Of a DNA stretch of 64,000 bases, positions 21,112-64,000 are shown piece after piece (the stretch's first letter is position 1; each line of letters starts with the position of its first letter). The stretch is taken from assembly GCA_937625935.1 (NCBI GenBank), contig OW569346.1, positions 623,803-687,802 on the forward strand. Direction: 5' to 3'. This DNA comes from Tetramitus jugosus. Its lineage: Eukaryota; Protista; Heterolobosea. A model generated the notes under the pieces. It made no database searches. It saw only the letters and a program-made list of their open reading frames with translations, and was not told the origin of the DNA. Both the position numbers and the translations under genes were made by a program.

Positions 21112-22155
21112 TTACAAAGTAAAGATACCAGCAACACCAACTTCTCCAGCACTGTAGGATGATCTATTGTAGCCAGGATCGTTGACGTAGAAGGTAGATC
21201 TATCAGCGCTGACACCAGTTGCCAACACCCAGTGACCACCTCTGTTGACATTCAAAATGACAACATTGTTGGCACAAATGTGCTTGGCAATCTCAGCCTT
21301 GCTAGATGGTTGACCAATGTATCTGAGTCCGAATCTGGAGACAGATCCCCAGATGAACAAGCTTCCTTGGTATCCACCATTGCTTCTCAAGAATGAGTTC
21401 AAGGTACCTGGATTTGGAGATTGACCATTGACAGACTTGCCCAAGCCGTTCAAAGCCATGGAAACAGAGCTCATCAAGCATCCAATTCTGCAAACAGAGG
21501 AACTGCCCAAAGCATTGCCTCCCCATCTACCATCGCATTGCTTGAACAATGGATAGTTTCTGGTCTTGCAGGAGCCGGCACCACCGCCGCCGCCACCGCC
21601 ACCACCACCAACAACAGTGACAAAGTTGGAAGCGACCCAACCATTGGAAACAGAGTACCAAGTGTAACCGCAGCCACTCTGGGACTTGCCAGTGTACTTT
21701 GTGGTTTGACCAGAACCCAATCCAGCAACAATCTTGTATGTGGTGCAAGGACCGGAACGAACATTCAATCCAGTGGTAGCACGCAAGGTGGCACCATTGC
21801 TAATGGATGAATCAGAGAGAATCTCAGAGTTGTCACTCAACACAGAGGACTCATCTTCTTCAATCATGTCGGACAAGACGGCTTCTTGCTTTTGAACGTC
21901 CTTGTTCAACAATTGTTGAGAAATCTTGTCCAACTTGTTTGTCAATTTGGACAACTTTTTTTGCCAGTCGAGCTTCTTCTTTTCAGGGATGCAGGACTTG
22001 ATGCATTCGACAACTTCTTGTTGAGAAGGCTTGGTAGCAGCACCAGTGGTGGTAGAGAGGCACTTGGCAGCACAGGAAGCAGTGGCGCTTCTAGCAGAAG
22101 CAGCAGCAGCAAACAGAGCAACGAGCAATAAGAGGGACAGAATGACCTTTCTCAT
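21112..22155 (-). CDS. Secreted SH3b + peptidase C39-like (papain-fold) protein, putative cell-wall hydrolase
   Basis: Start MRKVILSLLL at 22155; Cys-containing and acidic pro-region; SH3b (GLNVRSGP...TWY...GWVASNFV); poly-Gly linker; catalytic domain PLFKQCDGRWG, IGCLMSSVSMAL, GGHWVL, YVNDPG (Q/C/H/D). Confidence 0.8.
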   Translation of the reverse strand: MRKVILSLLLLVALFAAAASARSATASCAAKCLSTTTGAATKPSQQEVVECIKSCIPEKKKLDWQKKLSKLTNKLDKISQQLLNKDVQKQEAVLSDMIEEDESSVLSDNSEILSDSSISNGATLRATTGLNVRSGPCTTYKIVAGLGSGQTTKYTGKSQSGCGYTWYSVSNGWVASNFVTVVGGGGGGGGGGAGSCKTRNYPLFKQCDGRWGGNALGSSSVCRIGCLMSSVSMALNGLGKSVNGQSPNPGTLNSFLRSNGGYQGSLFIWGSVSRFGLRYIGQPSSKAEIAKHICANNVVILNVNRGGHWVLATGVSADRSTFYVNDPGYNRSSYSAGEVGVAGIFTL

Positions 22156-22564
22156 CGTGATGTATGTAGTGTAGGGATAATGGTACAAAAAAAAATGGGA
22201 TGATGATGCGTTTTTTGGTTTGTGCTGGAATTTGGAGAATTTGAAGCTGCACGAAGGTTCGGGTGTGCATTGTTGCGACATCCGGATTGTAAGCTAGGCG
22301 GAGTTATGCAATCTGATCGATTACAACGGGAATGACATCGACTGTCAAGGGTCGTACGCTTTCCAATTCTGGAGATAGCGGCGCTAAAGAATACGGTGAC
22401 TTGACTACAGATGCAACCAAGTAAACTCAACCTGCCTGGCAATGCCAACTCTGGTCCAGAAGTTTGCAACAGAAGTTTGATTTTTGTCATGAATCGGAGT
22501 TCTCGTGTGAATGTCCGATCACAAAAAACAACAGAAAATCAGAAAAAGATTGTTAAGAGCAACC

Positions 22565-50065: not shown

Positions 50066-50675
50066 TATAGCAATTTTCCAAAAAGTGTGACGTTTTTTGA
50101 GCGTCAAAAAAACAGAAATCAACGCTCCAAAAAGTTGTAAATCACAGTTAAATCAGGCTTTGCTCCAATTTCCAGTTGAATTTCCTCGCACAACCTCTTT
50201 TCTTCATCTTCGATAGCGTGAGCAACAAGAGGGGAATGTACTCAATTCCTTTCTTCAACAGTTGGACAGCTTCTTCATACAAGGCAAGTCAAATTTAATC
50301 TTCTAATTTGACCTTGTCCACGATGATTTTTGTTTTAGAAGTAAACACAGATCCACATACATATCACTTCTCTTCTGGAACCTGATAGTCACTCTTCCTC
50401 ATCAGATGAAGTGGATTGGTCATCAAAATCGAGCTTCTGGGCAACAGATTCGAAGCTTTCCTCTTTTCGTGCTGCACCTCAAGTCTAATTGCATTCAACT
50501 CAGACATGAACAATAGCATAAGTGCAGGTGATATCAATCCATTCTCCCTCCACTGCAAACGTCTTTGAGCTGATGAACAGTATCTTTCCCATCCTTTTTC
50601 TACAAATAAACGCTCAAAAACGCAAAAAAACACAAACCAGAAAAAAAACGTCACACTTTTTGGAAAATTGCTATA
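50066..50675. mobile_element. 610-bp element with 33-bp perfect terminal inverted repeats (MITE-like)
   Basis: TATAGCAATTTTCCAAAAAGTGTGACGTTTTTT at 50066-50098 and its exact reverse complement at 50643-50675; the outermost TA on each side could be a TA target duplication. Confidence 0.6.
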
Positions 50676-50985: not shown

Positions 50986-51879
50986 ATGGTTATTCCATTA
51001 TTAGCATTAGGAGGCGCTATGTACTATGGGTACAAAAAATACGTGAGTACAATTTGTTCTTTTTGCAACATTATTTAGTGAATCTTACACATTGGTATTT
51101 AGCAATCATGGGTTGCTCCAAAGAGAATAATTGTTTTTGGGTTGAGAGCTTCTGGTAAGGTTTGTAAGACTTTTTGCCCATTTTCATTCTCATGAATCAT
51201 GTGCTCACTTTCTCACTACAATTACATATTTAAGACCTCATTGATCAACGCTCTGACTGGGAGTGATGAAGCAGTGGGAAACGATCAGACTAAGAGCGTC
51301 ACTTATCGCAGAAAGAATCAAGACTATCAACTCTGGGATACACCTGGTCTCAATGATTTTGCCGCACTAGATTTACCTTCAGCAGTTATTTTGAATTCAC
51401 TTACAGATTTGATGAAGAATACATCTGAGGGTGTCAATTTGTTGATTTTTGTGGTAAAAGTTTCAGAACTGAAAAAGCCTGAAATCAGAAATCAATATGA
51501 CTTGATTGTTAGCCAACTGACTCAGAATAGAATACCAGTGATATTAGTGGTGACCCACTGTGAGCAAAACATTCAAAGTGAAGGAACCTTCGAAGAAAAG
51601 TGCCAGTCAATGTTCGATAGTTGCAACTCCATCAAATTGGAAGGAATGAAATTTTGTTCTCGAGTTGGTACTTGCTTTGCTTTTTCTGACAGAGGAAAGA
51701 ATGGGGAGCTTGGAAATCAATCGGCAAACAAGGTTTGGGCTTTGATTGAGGAGAGGGCAAATGATTCTTATATTCCTTACTTCTCTCGTTCTTCGGGCAC
51801 TGAGTTAATGACTCTCTTTGAACGTCTTGGATTTAATTCTGAACAAGCCAAAAGGAGCGCAGAGCAACTCGTGTCCTAG
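50986..51879 (+). CDS. AIG1/GIMAP-like P-loop GTPase with N-terminal hydrophobic segment
   Basis: Exons 50986-51042, 51103-51159, 51235-51879 restore G1 GLRASGK/T; G3 DTPG; G4 VTHCE. Confidence 0.8.
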
Positions 51880-52897: not shown

Positions 52898-53762
52898 TTA
52901 TTGCTCAGTCATGCTTTTCAATTCGGGTCTCTTATTGTTCGGGTTGATCCAAACTTCATTGAAACCTTGATGACCAAAATTTTGCAAGTAAATAAAGCCT
53001 TTCTCTCGTAACAATTTACGACATTGCTCATCCTTTTCTTTCGATTCTTCTCTTCCATTCAATTCAATCAAAATGGCATAGACAGGAACAGAGTCAAATG
53101 GATATGTGGCCAAAACTTCATACTCTGCACCCTCTACATCGACTGAGAAAAAGTCCACTCTCTTCAAGTTGGCTGCTTTCACATACTTTCGAATGGGGCT
53201 GCACTCAAGTGTCCAAATCTTTCCTTCTTTCCAAACTTTCTGATGGTAAGAATCCAATGTATCCTTCCTAGCTGCCATCGCTCCATGACCAATCATCTCA
53301 ATCGTTCTCTCTTGCATACACACTGCTCCTCGAACGGTAACAGCCTTTGGTCTATTGCGTTGAAGCGTTGCAAAAGTGTCTGGCTGTGGTTCAATCAACA
53401 AACCGTTCCAACCCAAAGAATCCTCATAGAATTTAGAGTTGGAGTATTTTAAACCATCAAAGGCTCCAATCTCAATAAATGTGCCATGATGCAATGGAGT
53501 TTCATCCTCCTTCATAAAATACTTTAGCATCAATTGATCTTCCTTGGCTTGTCCATAAAAAATGTACTTGTCTGGTTGTTTTTGTTGATCAACTGTGACC
53601 ACTCTCTGCTTTGTGCCTTCCGTCGATAAAAACGTTTCACGAACTGGATATTTCTCTCTGTTGGGAATCACCATTGTTGTGATGATGATCTGGTAGCTGA
53701 CCAGAAGGGATAACGACAAAGATGAACAATATTTTCAAACGGAAAATCACTTTGGTCCACAT
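52898..53762 (-). CDS. FkbM-family (Methyltransf_21, Star-like) methyltransferase, type II membrane anchor, 1-nt frameshift near 53708
   Basis: GTFIEIGAFDGLKYSNS, WNGLLIEP, VDFFSVDVEGAEYEVL; removing one base at ~53707-53709 joins MWTKVIFRLKILFIFVVI to LLVSYQII. Confidence 0.85.
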
Positions 53763-53864
53763 TCCTTTGAAAGGAAGTCGCGAATCTTTCAATTGTCAAA
53801 GAAGTCATGATTAGGAATGAAACGGTAACAATTTTACAGATACTTTAACTTATGCAAGACATAG

Positions 53865-54300
53865 TCGCAATGATTATATGAATCAAAGCATTGTTTGCCC
53901 ATTGGTTTGCGATTTGTGTTTTCTTCCTTTTGATCTTTCACTGGTACTTTGTTTTGTGTCTGAGTCCAATAACACATAGGACAATTCTTCAATAGGTACA
54001 TTCAAGAGATAGAGGTATGTTTCTCACATACATCTTCCAATGGAAAAAATTCTTTTGCCAGTTGTTTTACAAAGTCTACCTGACGAACACTTGACCATTT
54101 TGCTTGTTATAGACAACTCTGGCATTATGAGCGAGCAAACTCATTAAGAAAATGAGGATCGCAATGTTGTATGCCATGATCCGATGTCTGTAATAACAAG
54201 TGAGAATTGATCTATTCGCCTCATGAACAAATCCTGAAGTTTTATTGTAAAACCAAAATGCTTCAGGTAATCTTGTTCAAATAGTTTTCAAACTTGAGGG
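53865..54300 (-). mobile_element. Degenerate piggyBac-like transposase, C-terminal part
   Basis: Manual translation PEAFWFYNKTSGFVHEANRSIL...YRHR...IFLMSLLAHNARVVYN...DFVKQLAKEF...CPMC...CFDSYNH fits piggyBac PxxxxxYNxxMGGVDxxD...NAxxxY...F...LA plus a Cys-rich C-terminus; contains frameshifts. Confidence 0.65.
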
Positions 54301-54842
54301 TTGGTATCAAACAATTTCGTTTTTTTCATTCTAGGTATCATCTGAACTGTGGTGTTTGTTTTCACGCCTCAGCACTGGTTTATTAACATCGGAAACCATC
54401 CTTCTATATAGGTGTAACTAAAAAGGAAGGAATCTTAATAGGCAATGGGCTCAAATTTCAAACCTATAGGGGTGAGGCTCCCTGGGAATGAACATAAAGT
54501 GAGGGTTGAATCTGATATGGTGCAATGCTTTCGTCCATACAAATTAGTTGGGTTGGTTTCTTGCAACTTAAAAATTGTTGGTAGAGGACAGTTGGATCCA
54601 TTGCTCGATGGGAGCGTCCAGATATTATTTCTTACGGCCCCCCTAGGGAGGGTCTGAGAAATTTATTCAAATATTTATTCATAGGGGGTCTCTTGATCCC
54701 AATCCTAGTAGGAGAATTATTCGCTCGAATTTACAGGAAAATATGTTATTCAAATTTATTCAAAACAGGCAGAGAGGTTCAAAAATGAATATAATATCTG
54801 GACGCTCCCGATGTTCAAATTTAAACAACGAAACATTGGTGT

Positions 54843-54862
54843 GGGTTGGGTTTGGGTTTGGG
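54843..54862 (+). repeat. Interstitial telomeric 20-mer GGGTTGGGTTTGGGTTTGGG (copy 1)
   Basis: Direct read; same strand and unit as the terminal telomere. Confidence 0.9.
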
Positions 54863-55932
54863 ACTATGGGCGTGACAAGACTGTTTTCGATGCACTGGAA
54901 GCCAGACAGAACACATTGAAGATTTTCGAATCTGCGAAAGATGCTATCTGTGTCGATGGCGATCCGGAATATGTATCCAAGTGTTTGCGTGAGCGCATGG
55001 ACATTGAAGTAGACAGTCTCAAGGCTATACGAGCCGAAAGTACAATCGATCCAGGACGCATGGCTCTTGCCGTTAAGAATGATGGAAACATGCCACAGGA
55101 TATGTTGGCACACAAGATCACCGAGAATAGCGATACGGTGTACAATCCACATTTGATTCCCAAGAATAAGGAAGATTATGGTGCAGTGTTCGATGAAGAT
55201 GTCGATGACCAAGATGTTGTCTTTGAACGTGACGACGAAGAGGAGTTGAGCGAGGCCCACCTTGATCCATTCAGTTATGCAACCAACATTGACACCGTGG
55301 CAAACTCACAGCTTGTCATGGTATCTATTTTCTCCATGTGCCAACAACGGCTTGCTAAGGACAGACGCAAAGGCAATGAGACACAGTATCTGCTGAATAT
55401 GCCAGCATACGGTGCTGCACAAATAGCTGGAGAACTATGCGAACCAGATCCAACTGATCATACACACCGCCTCTGTGCATGTGCGGGAGACTATATACCA
55501 GGCGATAGTTCGCCTGAGAATATGCGCAGAAACCGATGTATTGCGTTCAGAGACACCAAATCACGCATTACACTTAAAGAATTCACTCTGGACTGGCTCA
55601 AGAAGGGAGAACCTCTTCCAAAAGAACGATTTCCGTGCATTTTGTGTGTGCGGATGGGTGTATCAGCGTACATCTGGGCACTCAAAGCAAACAACGAAAT
55701 GCGGTCAGAGTTTGTTGCACAGCCACATGCTAATACCACTGGACGTGGTGGGTACAGACCTGAAGTGTTCATCCCACAGACGCGTACCTTTCATGGTCTC
55801 GTTTCTCACTTTGTGCGCTACAGGGCTGATGACTACATTGAATCTGACTGTGTTCGGTATGCAAAGGGTAATCCGACATATCCTATTCGTGCCATTTTTG
55901 AGCGGGAGCAGCCGTCATCCACACGCCATTAG
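54863..55932 (+). pseudogene. 5'-truncated orphan Cys-rich protein, candidate large-DNA-virus gene
   Basis: Intronless ORF beginning at the telomeric 20-mer; RLCACAG...RCIAF...LKEF...PCILCVR...Q...N...GGY...HGLV motifs; no recognisable host domain. Confidence 0.5.
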
Positions 55933-55945
55933 CCAACTCGTGCCA

Positions 55946-58900
55946 ATGTGCTCGCGTGTGTGCTATTCAGTGCACCGTACGCCAAGAGACCACTGGGATA
56001 TGCTGCTCCTTAAACTAAACACGACCCAGGTCCTAAGCAAAGTGTTTCGAGACTGTGCTGACGATTCATTCAGGAGACTGCTGATGCACTGTCTGTCAAA
56101 GAATGCACTCCTACTTCCCATGACAACAAAACCTGGTTTTGTGTGTGATAAGCATGCTCAATTCGATAGCAGAGACGGATTGGTGGATGAATACATGCGT
56201 GAGTATGTTGTTCGTGTCAAGGCCAACACCGATATGAGCGAATTGAGCCGAGACTCTGGTGCACGGAATAGTGCCCTCGATGAGATGATTCTCATCGATG
56301 GGATCAGTCATGACACGGTTCGCGAACAGTTCAAGGTGCAAGACATTAGCTTTTTCCACACACCGAAGTATCGCTACTGTTACTGGAATCCATTGGCCAA
56401 ATACCGGGTCTTCAGAGAACGCCGACTATTCGACCTCCCGTTGTATTTCATTCTATGTGCTCGCATTAATCTATGCATGCATATGGTACGCCTACTATAT
56501 GACACCATCGAAGTGGGAAAACGCAATCCCTGTGCCAAAAGCGAACTTTCGTCTTCGCAATACGCCACAACTCTGTCATCAGGCAAAGACACCCAACAGA
56601 ACCGTGCTTTTGTCGAGAATAATGACAGACTCGACCATATACTCCACAACGAACACCACTACCAACGTACAGGTGGTCAGACACGTCTGACGAGCTTCAA
56701 CAAGTTCACATTACTTCTGCTACTGGAGAAGCTGGAGGAGATGCTCTACATTCATGTGCGTATCATGTGCCTAATCGAAGAGCTGTGCAAGCGTGAAGAT
56801 TCTGAATGTCTCATGTCGCTGTTCGCTAATCCGTTAATTATGAATTGTTTTGTGGGTGACATGCGTGATCGTGTATCCGTCCAGGATCTGACGAGCAGTG
56901 AGGAAGTGTTTGATGAACACGAAGCCTATGAGAAGAACACTGTCCAAATTCTGCAGCACTCGAAGAAGTTGTGTCTTATCCAACGCTGCTTCAGTGTTGT
57001 GGACAGTATGGCGGGAGTAGACAATGCTCAGTCCATCATGCACAAGACAGAAGACATCGTATTGGTGAACCTACGTCAAAGATGTCAGCATTTTGATTCG
57101 GTGCTTAGTTCAGGTGGTGTTATCTCACATCCACTAATTGCAGTGGACGCCGACAAAGGTGAAGTAGACAGAATCAGTTTAACCATCTCTCCCAAGAACA
57201 AGAAACAGAGGACAGCAGGGAAGGTTAACTCAAGATGCCTCGGACTCGTGACAACAGATGTTAGCATCATGGCACAATGTCGCAGTGAAGCGTATGGTAA
57301 AGATGCTGTGCAACTGGGCGAGTATTGCAAAACGAAGCTCGAAAGAATCAGAGCAAAAGACAGACAGCTTTTTGGACGGTTAAGTTCAGTTAGCACGATA
57401 GGTATGTCGTTCACTGAATGTACAGACATGCTTCGCGGTCTTGCATTGGACACAAGTTCTGTCGAAACCCTACACAGTCTGTTAGTCTATTTCAGACCGG
57501 ACTGTGCAGGTAGTCAATCGTTAAGACATCCCATATCGTTCCGATGTGAAACACGTCACACACTGATCAAGCAAGTACGAGCGAGTACCGAAGGACGCAC
57601 TCACTTCACGAGGTATACTGGATGTGGCCAAATGCACAATCTACTTTGCGTGTCTGTTGCGCATGAACCTTTGCATGGGTCTCGTTTTCTGGTGTTCTTT
57701 GTGGGAATTAGCAATCTCGACACTGCGATTGCATTCCAACAAGGTACGATCCTGTGTCTCTGGACAACTACCAGATCTTGATGGTTTGGAGTTTGATGCC
57801 TGTGGTCCATATGATAGAGACTTTAGCGAACGTGATGTTCATCACACTGAAGAACCACTCACACTGATTCGTGCTCTCAAATTCCAGGCATATCTTGCCT
57901 TCATGGATCATGTACCCCTTATGACCTACATTCTGGACACACACCACTTTACCGATAAACTCATCATGGAGTACCTGGATGGAAAGCACTACAGCATTAT
58001 CAAACCCACTCCAAATCGCTTCAACAACTGCCACAAGCTACCGTCTATGGAAAATGTATTGTACAGTTTGGATTACTCACGCGAGTCGTCTGATGACAAC
58101 CAGGACGACATTACCTACGCCATCAGCAAGGTACTGCCCAACATTTGCAGCTCGCGTTTCATGGAACGTATGATCATGGCCCGTTACGATCGTAATCCGG
58201 AGTTCCAACGTCTCCTCAATCAGGTACTCGAGTGCTCATTGCTCGGGCTTTATCCACACTGCAATCATCACTCCTTGCTCCAGAATCCATGCTATATCAT
58301 TTCCATGTACAATCAAATGTATAGTGCCAGTCATAAGCAGAGCCAAGTCAGTACACTCACACCAGGTCCCAAATTTAGGCATCAACTGATGCATCAAGTG
58401 GGAAAGAACGAAAAGGTGCTGATTGCTGTCATTCGAGAGTTCTTTGTTCATGCCGTGTCCGAGTCGAGTGTCGCAGAGTGGGCCATGCGAAATGTGGTAT
58501 GGAAGGAACCGCCGTTTGCTCCATGGGACGACTACAGAATACACACGCTTCATAATACTCTCTGGCGTCTCGCCTCCAGTATATGGAAAATGGAGTACAA
58601 TGGGGAAAAGATGGAGCATTGTGTATCGACTATCAGTACAACACATGCCGTGTCCCCACAACGGTCAGTTCCTGAGTCTATGCATCACAGAGCGAAAAAT
58701 GCATCGAAATGTTGTTGTGTGCCACAGAACCCGATTTTATGCGCAAAGTGGTGCTAGCCGGTCATCCAGATGCATGCCTCATTTCAGACAATGAACTGTT
58801 CAGGATCAAAAAGAGACGACAACGGAGGAAGAAGCACAAGACAGTGGCATGGAAGTCTGATCATCATAAGCATCGCACCTACGAGTACGGCTTCTGTGAA

Positions 58901-59870
58901 ATGCTTCGTAAGACTCTTACTCAGTCTTACGTCAGGCGTTGTATTGGTGCTGGTGGACCATCAAAAAGTGGATGTCCTGATGTGTTGTTAGCCCCGCAAT
59001 GGAGGACGAAGAGTGCGAAGACGAACCAGAATCCGAGACGTCCGACAAGAAAGAGATGGTTCTGGACTGTACATCCTTAATCAAATTCGACTTTAGCACC
59101 GGTGTACTTGATCAACCACTGATTGCATCCAACCCCGTTGTTGAGGATCTGAGCAAGTCCAAACGCAAAGAGCTAACAAATCGTGCAATGAACAACTACC
59201 GTGATAGCCAACGTAGCCCATGCAGCACTGAGCCGTACAATGTAATTGTGCCATTTCGTGCGTTTGGTCATCTGGTGCTTGACATGCTCAAGACCGGAGA
59301 GACCGATATGTACATGTACTGCTCGCGTTGTGCTAACTTTTGCGTCTATCATGCACTGCTTGTGCATGACGGGCACTTTGTCTGCCAACGATGTTCAGTC
59401 AAGGACCTGCTTCTATGTGTATCAACGACCACTAACACACCACATAATGAAATGCTGCCTATCAGCCCTGAGAGTGCACTATGCATTCATGAAGGTGGGA
59501 TACTGATGACAGAAAAGCCAACAAACATACTTCAGAACCGGCGCTATGCTGTTGTTAGCCAGATCAATGATCCTGACATTTACAGCCATGTGGACGGAGG
59601 GAGAAAGCCACCCAGCACAGTCAACAATGGTACATTGTCTGTTGTCTCTCGGAAAAAGGGCGGACGTGGTAAACCACCACCAGACACCAAAACACCAACC
59701 ACACAACGTGCTGTTTCGCGTGATAGTGAGTACGAAGCCCTGAAACAGACAGCACGTAACCCTGGCAAATTACGGTGTCACTTTGGTTCCTCTTTCTACA
59801 CAGTGGACACAATGGGTAAATTGCGGTCATGTGTTATGTCGAACTTGGCTGTAGCAGCCAACGAATATCT
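55946..59870 (+). pseudogene. Large frameshifted orphan gene, candidate large-DNA-virus gene
   Basis: ATG 55946 lies 14 nt after the previous stop; frames 55475-57781, 57624-58757, 58709-59080 and 58999-60030 overlap in series; motifs KVLPNICSSR, CSLLGLYPH, VIREFF and C-terminal YCSRC...VCQRC zinc finger. Confidence 0.5.
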
Positions 59871-59956
59871 TTCAAACCCACACTTTACCGAAAACCGACT
59901 GTATAATGGTGACCATGTTTGTTTGAGTGTTGTTTTGACAGTTTGTTTGTTTTTCC

Positions 59957-60037
59957 ACGAATGTCATGTGAAATGGCCTAACCAAAAATTCCTTTTTTTT
60001 TGGGAAAACGACCATGGCCATTTCACATGACATTCGT
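59957..60037. promoter_or_regulatory. 22-bp perfect inverted repeat upstream of the HMG/F-box gene
   Basis: ACGAATGTCATGTGAAATGGCC (59957-59978) and GGCCATTTCACATGACATTCGT (60016-60037), 37-nt spacer; each arm contains TCATGTGA. Confidence 0.6.
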
Positions 60038-60073
60038 TAACACCACAAGAAAAAAAAGGAATCAGCCACTAAG

Positions 60074-61105
60074 ATGAGCAAGAGGAAGGCAAAAGTAATT
60101 GAAATCGTATCTGACGAAGAAGAAGAAGAAGAAGAGGAGGAAGAAATCAAGATTAAGAAAAAGAAGACTGCTGCAAAGAAAGTTCCATCAGATTATGTCG
60201 GCTTCTGCAAAGAAGAAAGAGCAGAATTAAAGAGAGAATTTCCGGATATGAAGACAAAGGATATCGCAAAAGAGGTAAATGCCAGATGGAAGCTCGTCAA
60301 TGAGAAATATGAAGCAATGGACACGAGGTTTGATGAAATCCCACCTGAACTGTTGACCAATATTCTTGACTACATTCCAGTTGGTAGTAGGAGTGCATTG
60401 AACTTGAGAACTTGTAGTAGCCAGATTGATGCTTGCTTCAGAGAGCATAGACATTATCCACTCTATCAATACAAGTTCTCTGTGCCACAAATGATGAAAT
60501 ATTTGAGTGATAACAGCAATTTGTTGAAATCACATCAAATTGACAGCGCACTCAATTTGTCTTCAAAGTCACAAGAGTTTATTCATGCAGTGTCCCTCCT
60601 AGAACACAAGAAAAAGATTTGGGAGGAGTGGGTCGTTGAGAGTAAGGAGTACGAACATCCAACGGGTGTAAGTTTGACGCAATCTCAAAGACAAACAGTG
60701 TTTGACAATCTCTATAGCAGAGTCAATTTTGAGATGATGAATGAATCCACTGAATTCAATCATCGTGGCAATTATAGTAGCAATGTCACTACTGGTCGTA
60801 TTCGAATTGGAAACGATTTTTTGATTTCTTATACTTTCTCACAGGACGACAATGAAATTTTGGAAGGTTCTTTTTATCAGAGGAAGCGTGATCTTACCAT
60901 TAAATTTCTGTCTGTCAGGGGTAAACCAGTCAAGCATATCAGTTTTGATTGGGAGCACCGATATCCAAGAAGCAAGACGGATGGTGGTGTATTGAACAAG
61001 GTAAGAGATACATTGGGGTTGAATCAGATCCGTAATGATAACGATTTCATCGATCTTCTTACATTCGCATTACCATTTAATTGGTTAGAGCGGATGGACT
61101 TCTAA
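60074..61105 (+). CDS. HMG-box + F-box protein
   Basis: KKVPSDYVGFCKEERAELKREFPDMKTKDIAKEVNARWK (HMG/YABBY-like box) directly followed by F-box RFDEIPPELLTNILDYIP...LRTCSSQI. Confidence 0.75.
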   Translation: MSKRKAKVIEIVSDEEEEEEEEEEIKIKKKKTAAKKVPSDYVGFCKEERAELKREFPDMKTKDIAKEVNARWKLVNEKYEAMDTRFDEIPPELLTNILDYIPVGSRSALNLRTCSSQIDACFREHRHYPLYQYKFSVPQMMKYLSDNSNLLKSHQIDSALNLSSKSQEFIHAVSLLEHKKKIWEEWVVESKEYEHPTGVSLTQSQRQTVFDNLYSRVNFEMMNESTEFNHRGNYSSNVTTGRIRIGNDFLISYTFSQDDNEILEGSFYQRKRDLTIKFLSVRGKPVKHISFDWEHRYPRSKTDGGVLNKVRDTLGLNQIRNDNDFIDLLTFALPFNWLERMDF

Positions 61106-61951
61106 CGAGTATGTCTATGAAGAGTTGGGTGAAACGATCACAATGTTAACGGACTTGGGTTTTACTGCAAAAATCGGAACAATGGAAATTCCGAAAGCTG
61201 GATGGTCTCAAGTAGTTTATGATACAGTTACCGTGTTGACAATTAGTTGGTAGTGTGTTGCATGGATTTTGAAAAATAAAGACCACCTGTTTAATTTGGT
61301 AGTAATTGTTTGCTCTTTGTTGTTCAGGATTACACCGCCTGCACATTCCGAAACTCCGTCGATCTCAAAATGGAAGAACTCGTGTTTTTCGCGATCCATC
61401 AGGTCCGATCACAAGCTGTCAATAAAGTGCACCAAAAACAGTAACAACACATTACCAAACATAATAACTGCATAATTTTAGTATCGATTCGTGTTACAGC
61501 ATTGTCCTGCACAAAAACCCATGGTCAGGTACTGGACAACGATGTACCACACGGACGTGCACTCACTACGCGAAGATCCAACCTGATGGATTTCCGACGG
61601 CTTGCATCGAGCGGAGTATCAGCAGTTCAGTCCCAAGATTTTGTGACCCTCATGGTCCACTTGTTCATCAATGAAGGTGTATTCTCGAACAACAAAGAAG
61701 AAGTACCATGCAGCCCCATTGTTCATGCACTCAGAGCAATGTACATTGCTGCCAGAGAGGCTAGTGTGCAACAGATGGTTGGCGCACTCCGTGATCACAG
61801 AATTAATCAATTGAATCAGAAAAATAGTACCAAGATGCATATAAGACTGTCATCCTAGATAAGGGCACATTCAAGAGAAAGTTTAGTGCTTTGAATAAGA
61901 AAGAAGAAGAAGAGATTGAAATTGTCAAGGAAAAGTTTCGCAAAATAGGGG

Positions 61952-61971
61952 GGGTTGGGTTTGGGTTTGGG
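61952..61971 (+). repeat. Interstitial telomeric 20-mer GGGTTGGGTTTGGGTTTGGG (copy 2)
   Basis: Identical to 54843-54862. Confidence 0.9.
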
Positions 61972-62013
61972 TCTGTCTTGTTGTTAAGGAAAACCCGAGA
62001 ATTTAGCTGTATT

Positions 62014-62025
62014 TGGTATCAGAGC
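62014..62025 (+). mobile_element. Putative tRNA-iMet primer binding site TGGTATCAGAGC (LTR-retroelement/pararetrovirus type)
   Basis: Exact 12-mer complementary to the 3' end of plant-type initiator tRNA-Met; no LTR pair or intact gag-pol seen. Confidence 0.45.
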
Positions 62026-62539
62026 GTTGAAATTTACAGTTTAGTGTAAAAACAAAATTTAGTTCGGTTGAGTTGTGGCTTATAGGTTGAGGGAGTAAAA
62101 AGAAGACATATAGGACAAGGGTTGAATGGATTTTGGAGTCTATTATCAGATCGGAGATATTGAGGTTCAACGAACAGGGAGGTTCACGGTCCAGGACCGT
62201 GAAATGATTTCCTGTATTTCATCTCAGGTCATTTGTCAGTGGAGCTTTTTGGATCCAGCAAAGAATTTCGACCAATGAGCGAAGTGATTACAACGAATTC
62301 AGAAGGAATACAATACAGCAACATGAATATAACAGAAGACTTGTGAAGGAGTTCAACCTGAAATACAATGGCAGTCAATAGTTAACTATATTTTGTCTTG
62401 ATCATGATCTGTGACTACTAATTACGATTTATAGATACGCCGCAACCTGATTTTTAAGTAGTTTGATTTGATGTCTTTCTGATCTATCTGTACTAAAGTG
62501 CAAGTGCTTCTGTTGAAAAGCAGATTTCGGTTGCATCGA

Positions 62540-62753
62540 CCTCCAACCAGCATATAAACCCAAATCCCACCCTTTTTTACTTTTTGATTGTATATCTACA
62601 GAATAGGTCGTAGGGGACTCTGTAGTCATTCAATGAATCTTCAATTGAATCTCTGTTGAATCGCGAACTAATTATGTCAAAAGTACATTTAGGGTTGACT
62701 TCTCCTCCAACCAGTGTATAAACCCTTACCCAACCTTTTTTCTTTTTGACTGT
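62540..62753. repeat. Diverged direct repeat (~50 bp, ~164-bp spacing) in the telomere-adjacent sequence
   Basis: cctccaaccag-catataaaccc...ccttttttactttttgattgt (62540-62591) vs cctccaaccag-tgtataaaccc...ccttttttctttttgactgt (62704-62753). Confidence 0.6.
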
Positions 62754-62826
62754 TCAGGACTCAGAGCATTTCTACGTCAAAATTATCATATCTGTTCGTT
62801 ATCTATTGGTTCTGAAGTTATTTACA

Positions 62827-63735
62827 TGGGTTTGGGTTTGGGTTTGGGTTTGGGTTTGGGTTTGGGTTTGGGTTTGGGTTTGGGTTTGGGTTTGGGTTTG
62901 GGTTTGGGTTTGGGTTTGGGTTTGGGTTTGGGTTTGGGTTTGGGTTTGGGTTTGGGTTTGGGTTTGGGTTTGGGTTTGGGTTTGGGTTTGGGTTTGGGTT
63001 TGGGTTTGGGTTTGGGTTTGGGTTTGGGTTTGGGTTTGGGTTTGGGTTTGGGTTTGGGTTTGGGTTTGGGTTTGGGTTTGGGTTTGGGTTTGGGTTTGGG
63101 TTTGGGTTTGGGTTTGGGTTTGGGTTTGGGTTTGGGTTTGGGTTTGGGTTTGGGTTTGGGTTTGGGTTTGGGTTTGGGTTTGGGTTTGGGTTTGGGTTTG
63201 GGTTTGGGTTTGGGTTTGGGTTTGGGTTTGGGTTTGGGTTTGGGTTTGGGTTTGGGTTTGGGTTTGGGTTTGGGTTTGGGTTTGGGTTTGGGTTTGGGTT
63301 TGGGTTTGGGTTTGGGTTTGGGTTTGGGTTTGGGTTTGGGTTTGGGTTTGGGTTTGGGTTTGGGTTTGGGTTTGGGTTTGGGTTTGGGTTTGGGTTTGGG
63401 TTTGGGTTTGGGTTTGGGTTTGGGTTTGGGTTTGGGTTTGGGTTTGGGTTTGGGTTTGGGTTTGGGTTTGGGTTTGGGTTTGGGTTTGGGTTTGGGTTTG
63501 GGTTTGGGTTTGGGTTTGGGTTTGGGTTTGGGTTTGGGTTTGGGTTTGGGTTTGGGTTTGGGTTTGGGTTTGGGTTTGGGTTTGGGTTTGGGTTTGGGTT
63601 TGGGTTTGGGTTTGGGTTTGGGTTTGGGTTTGGGTTTGGGTTTGGGTTTGGGTTTGGGTTTGGGTTGGGTTTGGGTTTGGGTGGTTTGGGTTTGGGTTTG
63701 GGTTTGGGTTGGGGTTTGGGTTTGGGTTGGGTTGG
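62827..63735 (+). repeat. Telomere (TTTGGG)n, ~0.9 kb
   Basis: About 140 perfect hexamers with the G-rich strand pointing to the sequence end, degenerating after ~63660. Confidence 0.95.
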
Positions 63736-64000
63736 AATAATTAAAAAAAATATAAATCTTAAAAAAATAAAAAAAAATTAAAAAAATAAAAAAAAAAAAA
63801 ATTAAAAAAAAAATTAAAAAATATTAAATAAAAAAATAATTTAAAATAATAAAAAAAAAAAATAAAAAAAATAAAAAAATAAAAAAATAAAAAAAAATAT
63901 AAAAAAATAAAAATAAATAAAAATAAAAAAATTAAAATAAATAAAATAATAAAAAAAATAAAAAAAATAAAAACTAAAAATAAAAAAAAAAAATTCTAAT
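63736..64000. other. A-rich low-complexity tail distal to the telomere, probable base-calling artefact
   Basis: Almost only A/T, irregular T(1-2)A(n) runs directly after degenerate telomere repeats. Confidence 0.6.

What the first reader, a model, noticed from the sequence alone, without database searches (positions are those of the whole stretch)
54843..61971. A 7.1-kb segment bracketed by two identical telomeric, G-quadruplex-competent 20-mers
Seen: GGGTTGGGTTTGGGTTTGGG occurs at 54843-54862 and 61952-61971. Both carry the same variant first unit (TT instead of TTT), have exactly four G3 tracts, lie in telomere orientation and sit at abrupt sequence junctions. Inference, three options: (a) a 20-bp target-site duplication or attachment site of an element that integrates into telomeric repeats; (b) scars of repeated telomerase healing followed by capture of new DNA, so that the end grows by accretion; (c) G4 recombination sites. 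Option (a) would be an undescribed telomere-targeting cargo element.
Basis: partly seen in the sequence, partly recalled or inferred. Interest (0 to 1): 0.8.

Follow-up and report, generated by a model that had tools for sequence, protein, structure and literature searches.

The report
Telomere-repeat scars around captured viral DNA
At the end of an amoeboflagellate (heterolobosean) chromosome, two identical 20-base telomere-repeat stubs mark the seams where a 7.1-kb block of foreign DNA, mostly a decayed piece of an unknown large DNA virus, was stitched on; this looks like ordinary chromosome-end patchwork, not a new telomere-targeting mobile element.

Summary
The exact 20-mer lies at 54843-54862 and 61952-61971, on the same strand as a terminal (TTTGGG)n array at 62827-63733. 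These are the only interstitial telomere tracts and the only G4 motifs in the first 62.8 kb.

The window is a chromosome end of a heterolobosean, a group in which TTTGGG is the candidate telomere repeat.

The bracketed block is not an intact element. No reverse transcriptase, transposase or integrase domain was found by Pfam, and it has no terminal repeats.

- **54863-60030 (GC 47%)** is collinear with a two-gene block found in large, ORFan-dense metagenome contigs that encode a family B DNA polymerase.
- **Gene 1** is cut inside a conserved stretch 3 nt after the first 20-mer.
- **Gene 2** is read in three frames and is about half the length of its relatives.
- **60031-61951** carries an intact HMG-box ORF with host-like codon use.

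Best reading (about 0.55): the 20-mers are short telomerase-made tracts left at junctions of healing or end-joining, in a subtelomeric patchwork.

Their identity is only mildly surprising. GGGTTGGG recurs as an array start in unrelated metagenome telomeres, and exactly 20 nt is the commonest length among such tracts of 20 nt or more.

Main rival (about 0.2): one tract was duplicated when the block was inserted at a staggered break. An active telomere-targeting element is unlikely. Deciding needs the other chromosome ends and the long reads.

The parts
53720..54842 (.). Proximal flank L: non-coding, GC 36.5%. It ends ...CATTGGTGT at the first 20-mer and contains a 200-bp unit with perfect 19-nt inverted ends (54610-54809).
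54843..54862 (+). Interstitial telomeric tract 1 (exact 20-mer, four G3 tracts).
54863..55932 (+). Remnant of virus-like gene 1: the C-terminal 355 codons only. Homology to the 734-aa and 674-aa relatives starts at Tyr 54865. The conserved stretch just upstream in the relatives is missing. The reading frame stays open leftwards through the 20-mer to an ATG at 54811.
55946..60030 (+). Remnant of virus-like giant gene 2 (2691 aa in L001). Homologous pieces lie in three frames: frame 2 up to 56509, frame 0 from 57600 to 58556, and frame 1 from 59149. About 1000 codons are missing between residues 1267 and 2251 of the relative.
59957..60037 (.). Perfect 22-nt inverted repeat (37-nt spacer) at the border between the virus-like part (GC 46.9%) and the host-like part (GC 39.9%) of the block.
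60074..61105 (+). Intact 343-aa ORF with an HMG box (Pfam 5e-08), a weak F-box-like motif and host-like codon use. It has no counterpart in the viral relatives.
61445..61858 (+). Open frame of 137 codons with no family match. It is the last coding-like stretch before the second 20-mer.
61952..61971 (+). Interstitial telomeric tract 2 (exact 20-mer). Its G run begins at 61948.
61972..62826 (.). Segment B: 855 bp, non-coding, GC 37.0%. It holds two 49-nt direct repeats (62529-62577 and 62693-62741). Each carries TATAAA, a degenerate C-strand telomere-like motif and a T run.
62827..63733 (+). Terminal (TTTGGG)n array. It starts CAT|GGGTTTGGG, without the TT variant. It has 139 perfect units, then variant units in the last ~75 nt.
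63739..64000 (.). A-rich low-complexity tail after the array (210 A, 49 T, 3 C, 0 G). It is probably contig-end noise and runs to the end of the window.

Best explanation
This is a subtelomeric patchwork. The two 20-mers are short telomerase-made tracts left at seams. At each seam a DNA end at or near the chromosome tip was extended by telomerase, or a healed telomere was trimmed to a stub, and was then joined to another DNA fragment.

The 7.1-kb block between them is passive cargo. It consists of 5.2 kb of a decayed fragment of an endogenised large DNA virus-like element, truncated at the left end of its genes, plus 1.9 kb with a host-like HMG-box gene. The outermost 855-bp block was healed in turn and now carries the working telomere.

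**Shown:**
- the tracts and their orientation;
- the truncation and decay of the viral genes;
- the lack of terminal repeats and of recognisable mobility domains;
- the composite make-up of the block.

**Inferred:**
- that telomerase made the tracts;
- the order of events;
- that the two tracts arose independently.
For: **Host and telomere.** The UBR4 domain is closest to Willaertia (40% identity) and Naegleria (42%). TTTGGG is the candidate telomere repeat of N. gruberi (PMC3622300). The 20-mers share strand and unit with the terminal array.

**The block begins at a break, not at an element end.**
- Window 55231-55908 matches residues 502-728 of a 734-aa protein at 38% identity (E 3e-38).
- Window 56336-59400 is collinear with the adjacent 2691-aa gene.
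- Alignment A1 shows homology starting 3 nt after the 20-mer. The conserved stretch upstream in both relatives has no counterpart.

**Decay.** Homologous pieces of gene 2 lie in three frames, and about 1000 codons are missing.

**No Pfam-recognisable machinery and no termini.** No Pfam reverse transcriptase, transposase or integrase domain was found. The block has no TIR or LTR.

**The relatives are virus-like.**
- They sit in contigs of 61-171 kb whose genes almost all lack Pfam hits.
- A family B DNA polymerase lies 7-13 kb downstream in two lineages.

**The identity of the two tracts needs no common origin.**
- (TTTGGG)n arrays in unrelated metagenome contigs begin with GGGTTGGG directly after non-telomeric DNA. 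This is seen in true contig-end telomeres L061 (twice in one telomere), L100 and L124.
- 15 of 24 isolated tracts of this type that are 20 nt or longer are exactly 20 nt.

**Precedents.**
- Telomerase-made short interstitial tracts form at break repair (PMC2246262, abstract seen).
- Viral DNA chunks lie next to telomeric repeats in Acanthamoeba subtelomeres (PMC12210455).
Against: - Two independent events giving the same 20 nt remains a coincidence. The metagenome sample that softens it was selected with the 20-mer itself, is taxonomically mixed, and cannot see tracts shorter than 20 nt.
- The window's own terminal array starts GGGTTTGGG, not GGGTTGGG. The 'stereotyped start' is therefore not universal.
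- In an unselected control of (TTTGGG)>=4 runs in IMG/VR, only 2 of 42 start with GGGTT. Most of those runs are coding repeats, not telomeres.
- The two outer flanks, L and B, are both non-coding and of nearly equal GC (36.5% and 37.0%). That would also fit their having been contiguous before an insertion.
- Not every seam has a tract. The border inside the block at about 60030 has a hairpin instead.
Confidence: 0.55

Rival explanations
1. There was a single ancestral interstitial tract (L-20mer-B-telomere). A staggered break around the G4-prone tract was filled in on both sides, and a stray DNA fragment (block A) was ligated in. The whole tract was thereby duplicated, like a 20-bp target-site duplication. 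No element-encoded enzyme is involved.
For: - The two copies are identical, and identity stops sharply at both ends.
- L and B are both non-coding and match in GC (36.5% and 37.0%), while the block is 46.9% and 39.9%.
- The tracts are the only G4 motifs in 62.8 kb.
- The insert starts mid-gene, as captured filler DNA would.
Against: - Nicks falling exactly at both borders of the tract would be needed.
- No empty site could be sought.
- The shared TT variant and the length of 20 nt also arise independently elsewhere, so identity is weak evidence for duplication.
Confidence: 0.2
2. Virus-borne telomere-like repeats, as in HHV-6 or Marek's disease virus. The infecting virus carried copies of the host repeat and recombined with the telomere through them. 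The block would be what remains between two viral repeat tracts after loss of the rest of the genome.
For: - Most of the block is derived from a large DNA virus-like element.
- The tracts are same-orientation repeats bracketing a 7-kb unit next to the telomere. This recalls an integrated herpesvirus direct repeat (own knowledge).
Against: - The first tract sits inside a conserved coding region of gene 1, not at a genome terminus.
- No telomere-type repeats occur in 154 kb of loci from the relatives. Those contigs are incomplete and their hosts' repeats are unknown.
- Part of the block is host-like.
Confidence: 0.07
3. An autonomous telomere-targeting mobile element whose attachment site or target-site duplication is the 20-mer.
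For: The block is bracketed by identical direct repeats in telomeric DNA. The large ORFs have no known function.
Against: - No Pfam reverse transcriptase, integrase or transposase domain was found, and the block has no TIR or LTR.
- The left end is a truncated gene, and gene 2 is frameshifted and shortened.
- The genes read towards the telomere. This is opposite to elements that are reverse-transcribed from the G overhang (own knowledge of HeT-A/TART and Athena).
- In the relatives the same two genes lie in the middle of 60-170-kb contigs.
Confidence: 0.05
4. An assembly or read artefact: a chimeric join at telomere repeats.
For: The contig end is noisy. The last ~75 nt of the array hold variant units, and 262 nt of A-rich junk follow.
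Against: - A chimera with a natural chromosome end would carry a long array, not 20 nt.
- Host ORFs up to 3932 aa are uninterrupted, so the consensus is accurate.
- Two identical artefacts 7.1 kb apart are unlikely.
Confidence: 0.03

Closest known systems
Interstitial telomeric repeats at subtelomeric block borders: yeast X-(TG1-3)-Y' and tandem Y' arrays; (TTAGGG)n islands between human subtelomeric blocks (own knowledge)
   Same: Short repeats in telomere orientation separate unrelated blocks within a few kb of the chromosome end. The 5-7-kb block has genes reading towards the telomere, as in Y'.
   Different: The block here is not known to be a repeated subtelomeric family, which could not be tested. 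It encodes no helicase. Its core is a decayed viral fragment. The two tracts are identical and only 20 nt long.
Telomerase-made short interstitial telomeric sequences inserted during double-strand-break repair (Nergadze et al. 2007, PMC2246262; PMC7215372; abstracts seen)
   Same: A few exact repeat units sit at a seam between unrelated sequences, without the features of a mobile element.
   Different: Those cases are internal chromosomal sites in mammals, each shown by comparison with an orthologous empty locus. Here there are two seams at a chromosome end, and no empty locus is available.
Subtelomeric insertions of giant-virus DNA in Acanthamoeba (PMC12210455) and the mirusvirus-like element at the end of Aurantiochytrium chromosome 15 (10.1101/2023.06.15.545109)
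   Same: There are partial, non-mobile viral DNA chunks near chromosome ends and next to telomeric repeats, with GC shifts and decay. In Acanthamoeba no mobility functions or terminal inverted repeats were found either.
   Different: The host lineage differs (Heterolobosea), and so does the viral lineage, which is unclassified. The fragment is much smaller (5.2 kb). It lies in a block bounded by two identical minimal repeat tracts.
Telomere integration of herpesviruses through viral telomere-like repeats: HHV-6A/B, Marek's disease virus (own knowledge)
   Same: DNA of a large DNA virus lies at a chromosome end, with same-orientation telomere repeats on both sides of a 7-8-kb unit.
   Different: The left repeat interrupts a conserved gene. 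The sampled relatives carry no such repeats. The viral genes are broken.
Telomere-specific retroelements: Drosophila HeT-A/TART, Bombyx SART/TRAS, Athena Penelope-like elements and Terminons of bdelloid rotifers (own knowledge)
   Same: Cargo-carrying units at chromosome ends are separated by short telomeric repeat stretches.
   Different: No reverse transcriptase domain was found by Pfam. The orientation is opposite to end-primed reverse transcription. There is no poly(A) tail or conserved 3' end.

Membership tests
Telomere-specific retrotransposons (HeT-A/TART, Athena/Terminon, SART/TRAS) | Encodes, or depends on, a reverse transcriptase | tested here: not met
   Pfam scans of all ORF pieces up to E=5 show no RT domain. 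The relatives of the large ORFs have no RT either.
Telomere-specific retrotransposons (HeT-A/TART, Athena/Terminon, SART/TRAS) | The 3' end faces the centromere, so the sense strand is the C strand, when primed from the G overhang; or a poly(A) tail sits at the junction | tested here: not met
   All coding signal is on the G-strand side, reading towards the telomere. There is no A run before the second 20-mer.
DNA transposon or integrase-borne element with a target-site duplication | Transposase or integrase gene, and terminal inverted or direct repeats inside the duplication | tested here: not met
   No such Pfam domain was found. There is no TIR or LTR between the first and last 600 nt of the block.
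DNA transposon or integrase-borne element with a target-site duplication | An empty site with a single copy of the duplicated target exists elsewhere (allele, strain or paralogous end) | not testable with these tools
   The source genome is not in the searchable collections. No self-hit appeared, and one search found nothing on record.
Subtelomeric patchwork with interstitial telomeric repeats at block borders | Repeats in telomere orientation lie at borders between unrelated blocks near a true chromosome end | tested here: met
   orientation, unrelated flanks, GC steps, and a terminal array of 152 units.
Subtelomeric patchwork with interstitial telomeric repeats at block borders | The blocks are shared among several chromosome ends | not testable with these tools
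   Only one chromosome end is available. No copy of block A or B lies elsewhere in the window or in the fetched metagenome loci.
Endogenous fragment of a large DNA virus | Collinear homology of several genes to a lineage that encodes its own replication genes | tested here: met
   The two-gene collinearity holds with three lineages. A family B DNA polymerase lies nearby in two of them. No capsid or packaging gene was identified, so 'virus' rather than another large element remains an inference.
Endogenous fragment of a large DNA virus | Signs of decay relative to the free relatives | tested here: met
   Gene 1 lacks the region before the conserved domain. Gene 2 lies in three frames and is about half length.
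Herpesvirus-type telomere integration through viral telomere-like repeats | The virus genome itself carries host-type telomere repeats at its termini or repeat borders | tested here: inconclusive
   None were found in 154 kb of loci from the relatives. The contigs are incomplete and come from other hosts.

The most novel reading that the evidence does not exclude
The 20-mer is a stereotyped product or a preferred site, not a random stub. One version: this telomerase lays down GGGTTGGGTTTGGGTTTGGG as its first pass on any non-telomeric end, copying an alignment region that is otherwise not copied. Every healing or break-repair event then leaves the same signature. The other version: a single G4-forming tract is a preferred breakage-and-capture site that is duplicated on each insertion. 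Either way, heterolobosean chromosome ends would grow by repeated capture of foreign DNA, including viral DNA, at a defined 20-nt telomeric motif.
Probability: 0.2. Interest if true: 0.65.

Novelty: new member of a known kind. Interest (0 to 1): 0.4.

Why it matters
This is a clean, small example of how a chromosome end in a little-studied eukaryotic lineage (Heterolobosea) is built from captured pieces, with telomere-repeat stubs at the seams. One of the pieces is a fossil of an uncharacterised lineage of large DNA virus-like elements that encode a family B DNA polymerase. That lineage is otherwise seen only in metagenomes.

If the 20-mer proves to be a stereotyped telomerase product or a preferred capture site, it would give a sequence tag for dating and counting healing and capture events. 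It would also give a handle on the still unidentified heterolobosean telomerase RNA template.

As it stands, the finding is mostly an ordinary subtelomeric structure.

Tried and rejected
**Protein searches on the block**
- Word-based search with the 768-aa ORF found nothing. Its length window excludes the 1167-2691-aa relatives that the exhaustive search later found.
- Word-based search with the 734-aa relative found nothing, not even itself.
- Back-translated pattern scans with alignment A1 in IMG/VR and in JGI metagenomes found no confirmed relatives.
- PDB sequence searches with the gene-2 piece and with the gene-1 profile found nothing meaningful.
- AlphaFold2 of the gene-1 conserved domain, using a 3-sequence alignment, gave mean pLDDT 33. 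No fold search was run on it.

**Searches for the source genome**
- The exact-protein look-up for the window's Gpi1 ORF found nothing on record, so the other chromosome ends of this genome are out of reach.
- Three look-ups failed on a product mismatch, shown for one to be a non-ATG start.

**Other features in the window**
- Rfam and tRNA scans of 48-64 kb found nothing above threshold.
- No similarity was found between the flanks of the two 20-mers, between blocks A and B, or to the rest of the window.

**Readings I dropped**
- I first read the contig of L005/L006 as a decayed copy. It is an intact relative that reads TAG as sense.
- I first read the frame 1 to frame 2 change at about 55930 as a frameshift. 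It is the natural gene 1 / gene 2 border.
- A Paramecium-type telomere or a ciliate origin is excluded by the long standard-code ORFs and by the UBR4 hits.

**Handling of broken genes**
- The frameshifted gene 2 was never joined or read through. Its pieces were searched apart.
- The window is not human. No toxin, effector or animal-virus sequence was involved.
Full report
**1. The observation**

GGGTTGGGTTTGGGTTTGGG occurs exactly at 54843-54862 and 61952-61971 on the + strand. Shuffled sequence gives none. The window ends with a (TTTGGG)n array at 62827-63733 on the same strand (TRF: 152 copies). That array has 139 perfect units, then variant units in its last ~75 nt, and is followed by 262 nt of 80% A.

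Apart from the terminal array, these are the only telomere-like tracts on either strand. They are also the only canonical G4 motifs in 62.8 kb.

Identity ends exactly at the 20-mer. The neighbouring kilobases are unrelated. The second copy is preceded by four more G. A third exact copy lies within the noisy end of the terminal array.

**2. Whose chromosome end**

The window is gene-dense with long uninterrupted standard-code ORFs. These include a 3932-aa UBR4 homologue, Gpi1, and Kelch, LRR, ankyrin and F-box proteins. The UBR4 C-terminal domain is closest to Willaertia magna (40% identity) and Naegleria gruberi (42%). The next hits are at or below 34%.

TTTGGG was proposed as the telomere repeat of N. 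gruberi (PMC3622300). The window is therefore a chromosome end of a heterolobosean that is not one of the sequenced Naegleria or Willaertia species. It is not human. Its own proteins are not in the searchable collections, so other chromosome ends of this genome could not be examined.

**3. What lies between the 20-mers**

All coding signal in 54863-61951 is on the + strand, reading towards the telomere. Pfam finds only an HMG box, in the ORF at 60074-61105. No reverse transcriptase, transposase, integrase or helicase domain was found. The block ends carry no inverted or direct terminal repeats.

The exhaustive protein search with the piece 55901-57598 gave four weak hits, all from metagenomes. 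Fetching their contigs showed the real relationship.

- Window 55231-55908 matches residues 502-728 of a 734-aa protein (38% identity, E 3e-38).
- Window 56336-59400 is collinear with the gene immediately downstream of it. That gene is 2691 aa in L001 and is split into 1167 + 1455 aa in L003.
- The same pair occurs in three lineages: L001/L002 (GC 48%), L003/L004 (GC 65%) and L005/L006 (GC 48%).
- The contigs are 61-171 kb, and nearly all of their genes lack Pfam hits.
- In two lineages a family B DNA polymerase lies 7-13 kb downstream. Its profile reaches the palm region of Pol delta and Pol alpha at about 1e-7.

I infer a lineage of large DNA virus-like elements. No capsid or packaging gene was identified, so 'virus' is an inference.

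**4. State of the copy in the window**

In alignment A1, homology of gene 1 starts at the tyrosine encoded at 54865, 3 nt after the 20-mer. The two relatives share a further conserved stretch immediately upstream, and about 330 more residues beyond that. Neither has any counterpart in the window in any frame. The first 20-mer therefore abuts a breakpoint inside a conserved part of a gene.

The border between gene 1 and gene 2 (stop at 55930, ATG at 55946) is natural. Gene 2, however, has its homologous pieces in three frames: frame 2 up to 56509, frame 0 from 57600 to 58556, and frame 1 from 59149. It also lacks about 1000 codons between residues 1267 and 2251 of the relative. The host ORFs in the same window are intact, so these are real lesions and not consensus errors.

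The virus-like part (54863-60030) has GC 46.9%. The remaining 1.9 kb has GC 39.9% and carries an intact HMG-box ORF with host-like codon use. That ORF has no counterpart in the relatives. A perfect 22-nt hairpin marks this internal border. The pieces of gene 2 were searched separately and never joined.

**5. The outer pieces**

The proximal flank (53720-54842) and the distal 855-bp segment B (61972-62826) are both non-coding. Their GC is 36.5% and 37.0%. B holds two 49-nt repeats, each with TATAAA, a degenerate C-strand telomere-like motif and a T run. The terminal array begins CAT|GGGTTTGGG, without the TT variant.

**6. Is the identity of the two 20-mers significant?**

The exact 20-mer is frequent in public data.

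In several unrelated contigs a pure (TTTGGG)n run begins with GGGTTGGG directly after non-telomeric DNA. These include true contig-end telomeres (L100, L124, L061). In L061 the array is interrupted by TTTGGTGTGGT and restarts with the same 20 nt. This recalls the window's CATTGGTGT|20-mer junction.

Among 24 distinct tracts that start this way and have non-telomeric flanks on both sides, 15 are exactly 20 nt, 5 are 26 nt, and the rest are longer. The shared TT variant and the shared length are thus less improbable for independent events than they first appear.

Three caveats apply.
- The sample was selected with the 20-mer, is taxonomically mixed, and cannot see shorter tracts.
- In an unselected IMG/VR control only 2 of 42 (TTTGGG)>=4 runs start with GGGTT. 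Most of those runs are coding repeats.
- The window's own telomere does not start that way.

**7. Mechanism**

Most likely (about 0.55) the tracts are telomerase-made stubs at seams of healing or end-joining. A broken or eroded end received a few repeats and was then joined to another fragment. The new end was treated the same way, and the outermost piece now carries the functional telomere.

The cargo is passive. It is either a fragment of viral DNA or, perhaps more likely given its decay and its host-like distal part, a piece of chromosome that already contained an old viral insertion.

- **Main rival (about 0.2).** A single tract was duplicated when the block was inserted at a staggered break around the G4-prone tract. 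The matching composition of L and B and the exact borders favour this. Only an empty site can decide.
- **Herpesvirus-like model (about 0.07).** Here the repeats are viral. It is disfavoured because the left tract interrupts a conserved gene and because 154 kb of loci from the relatives carry no telomere-type repeats.
- **Autonomous telomere-targeting element (about 0.05).** It fails the tests for Pfam-recognisable enzymes, termini, orientation and integrity.
- **Assembly artefact (about 0.03).** It is unlikely for the reasons given under the rivals.

**8. Comparison with known systems**

The structure matches the general pattern of subtelomeric block borders marked by interstitial telomeric repeats, as in yeast X-TG-Y' and human subtelomeres (own knowledge). 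It also matches short tracts made by telomerase at break repair (PMC2246262).

Viral DNA chunks next to telomeric repeats, without mobility functions or terminal repeats, have been described in Acanthamoeba (PMC12210455). A mirusvirus-like element sits at a chromosome end in Aurantiochytrium (10.1101/2023.06.15.545109).

New here are the host lineage, the unclassified viral lineage and the pair of identical minimal tracts. I rate it a new member of a known kind, with interest 0.4.

**9. Dead ends**

The dead ends are listed under 'tried and rejected'.

Noticed in passing
window 63739-64000: After the telomere array the window continues with 262 nt of 80% A (no G, 3 C) up to its last base. This is probably contig-end or read-end noise. 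It does mean the array is not literally terminal in the window.
   Followed up: partly
window 62529-62577 and 62693-62741: Two 49-nt direct repeats (76% identical) lie in the last 300 bp before the telomere. Each has TATAAA followed by a degenerate C-strand telomere-like motif and a T run. They might be a subtelomeric promoter or binding site, or relics of inverted telomere repeats.
   Followed up: no
window 54610-54809: A 200-bp unit with perfect 19-nt inverted ends, flanked by GAT on both sides (MITE-like), ends 33 nt before the first 20-mer.
   Followed up: no
window 50066-50675: A 610-bp unit is bounded by perfect 33-nt inverted repeats in the gene-poor proximal subtelomere.
   Followed up: no
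window 59957-60037: A perfect 22-nt inverted repeat with a 37-nt spacer sits exactly at the GC and origin border between the viral gene-2 remnant and the HMG-box ORF.
   Followed up: partly
window 54811-54864: The reading frame of the truncated viral gene 1 stays open through the 20-mer, which is read as GVGWVWVW, up to an ATG at 54811. A fusion product is formally possible.
   Followed up: no
L005 and L006 (JGI contig Ga0495670_0000011, 171 kb): This relative of the virus-like element reads TAG as a sense codon. All in-frame stops in the gene-1 homologue are TAG. ORFs reach 2199 aa with table 6, against at most 319 aa (L005) and 452 aa (L006) with the standard code. It looks like a large DNA virus-like element of a host with reassigned stop codons.
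   Followed up: partly
L001/L007 (Ga0326352_1000056) and L003/L137 (Ga0395901_0000178): There is a conserved gene block: a 674-734-aa gene, a giant gene of about 2700 aa, a gene of about 1200 aa, and a very divergent family B DNA polymerase of 1251-1463 aa. The contigs hold almost no other Pfam hits. IMG/VR held no relative of gene 1, and the lineage is unclassified here.
   Followed up: partly
L061 (JAESGV010000876.1), last 150 nt in G-strand orientation: A contig-end (TTTGGG)n telomere starts with the same 20-mer, is interrupted by TTTGGTGTGGT, and restarts with the same 20-mer. This suggests a recurrent start signature for arrays of this repeat.
   Followed up: partly
window 21112-22281 (- strand): A 389-aa ORF combines a bacterial-type SH3_3 domain and a Peptidase_C39_2 domain inside a eukaryotic chromosome. 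It is a candidate for horizontal transfer.
   Followed up: no
window 52898-53719 (- strand) and 51199-51879 (+ strand): The last recognisable genes before the first 20-mer are an FkbM-type methyltransferase and a small GTPase-like ORF. They lie in a lower-GC (38%), ORF-poor stretch that may itself be subtelomeric patchwork.
   Followed up: no
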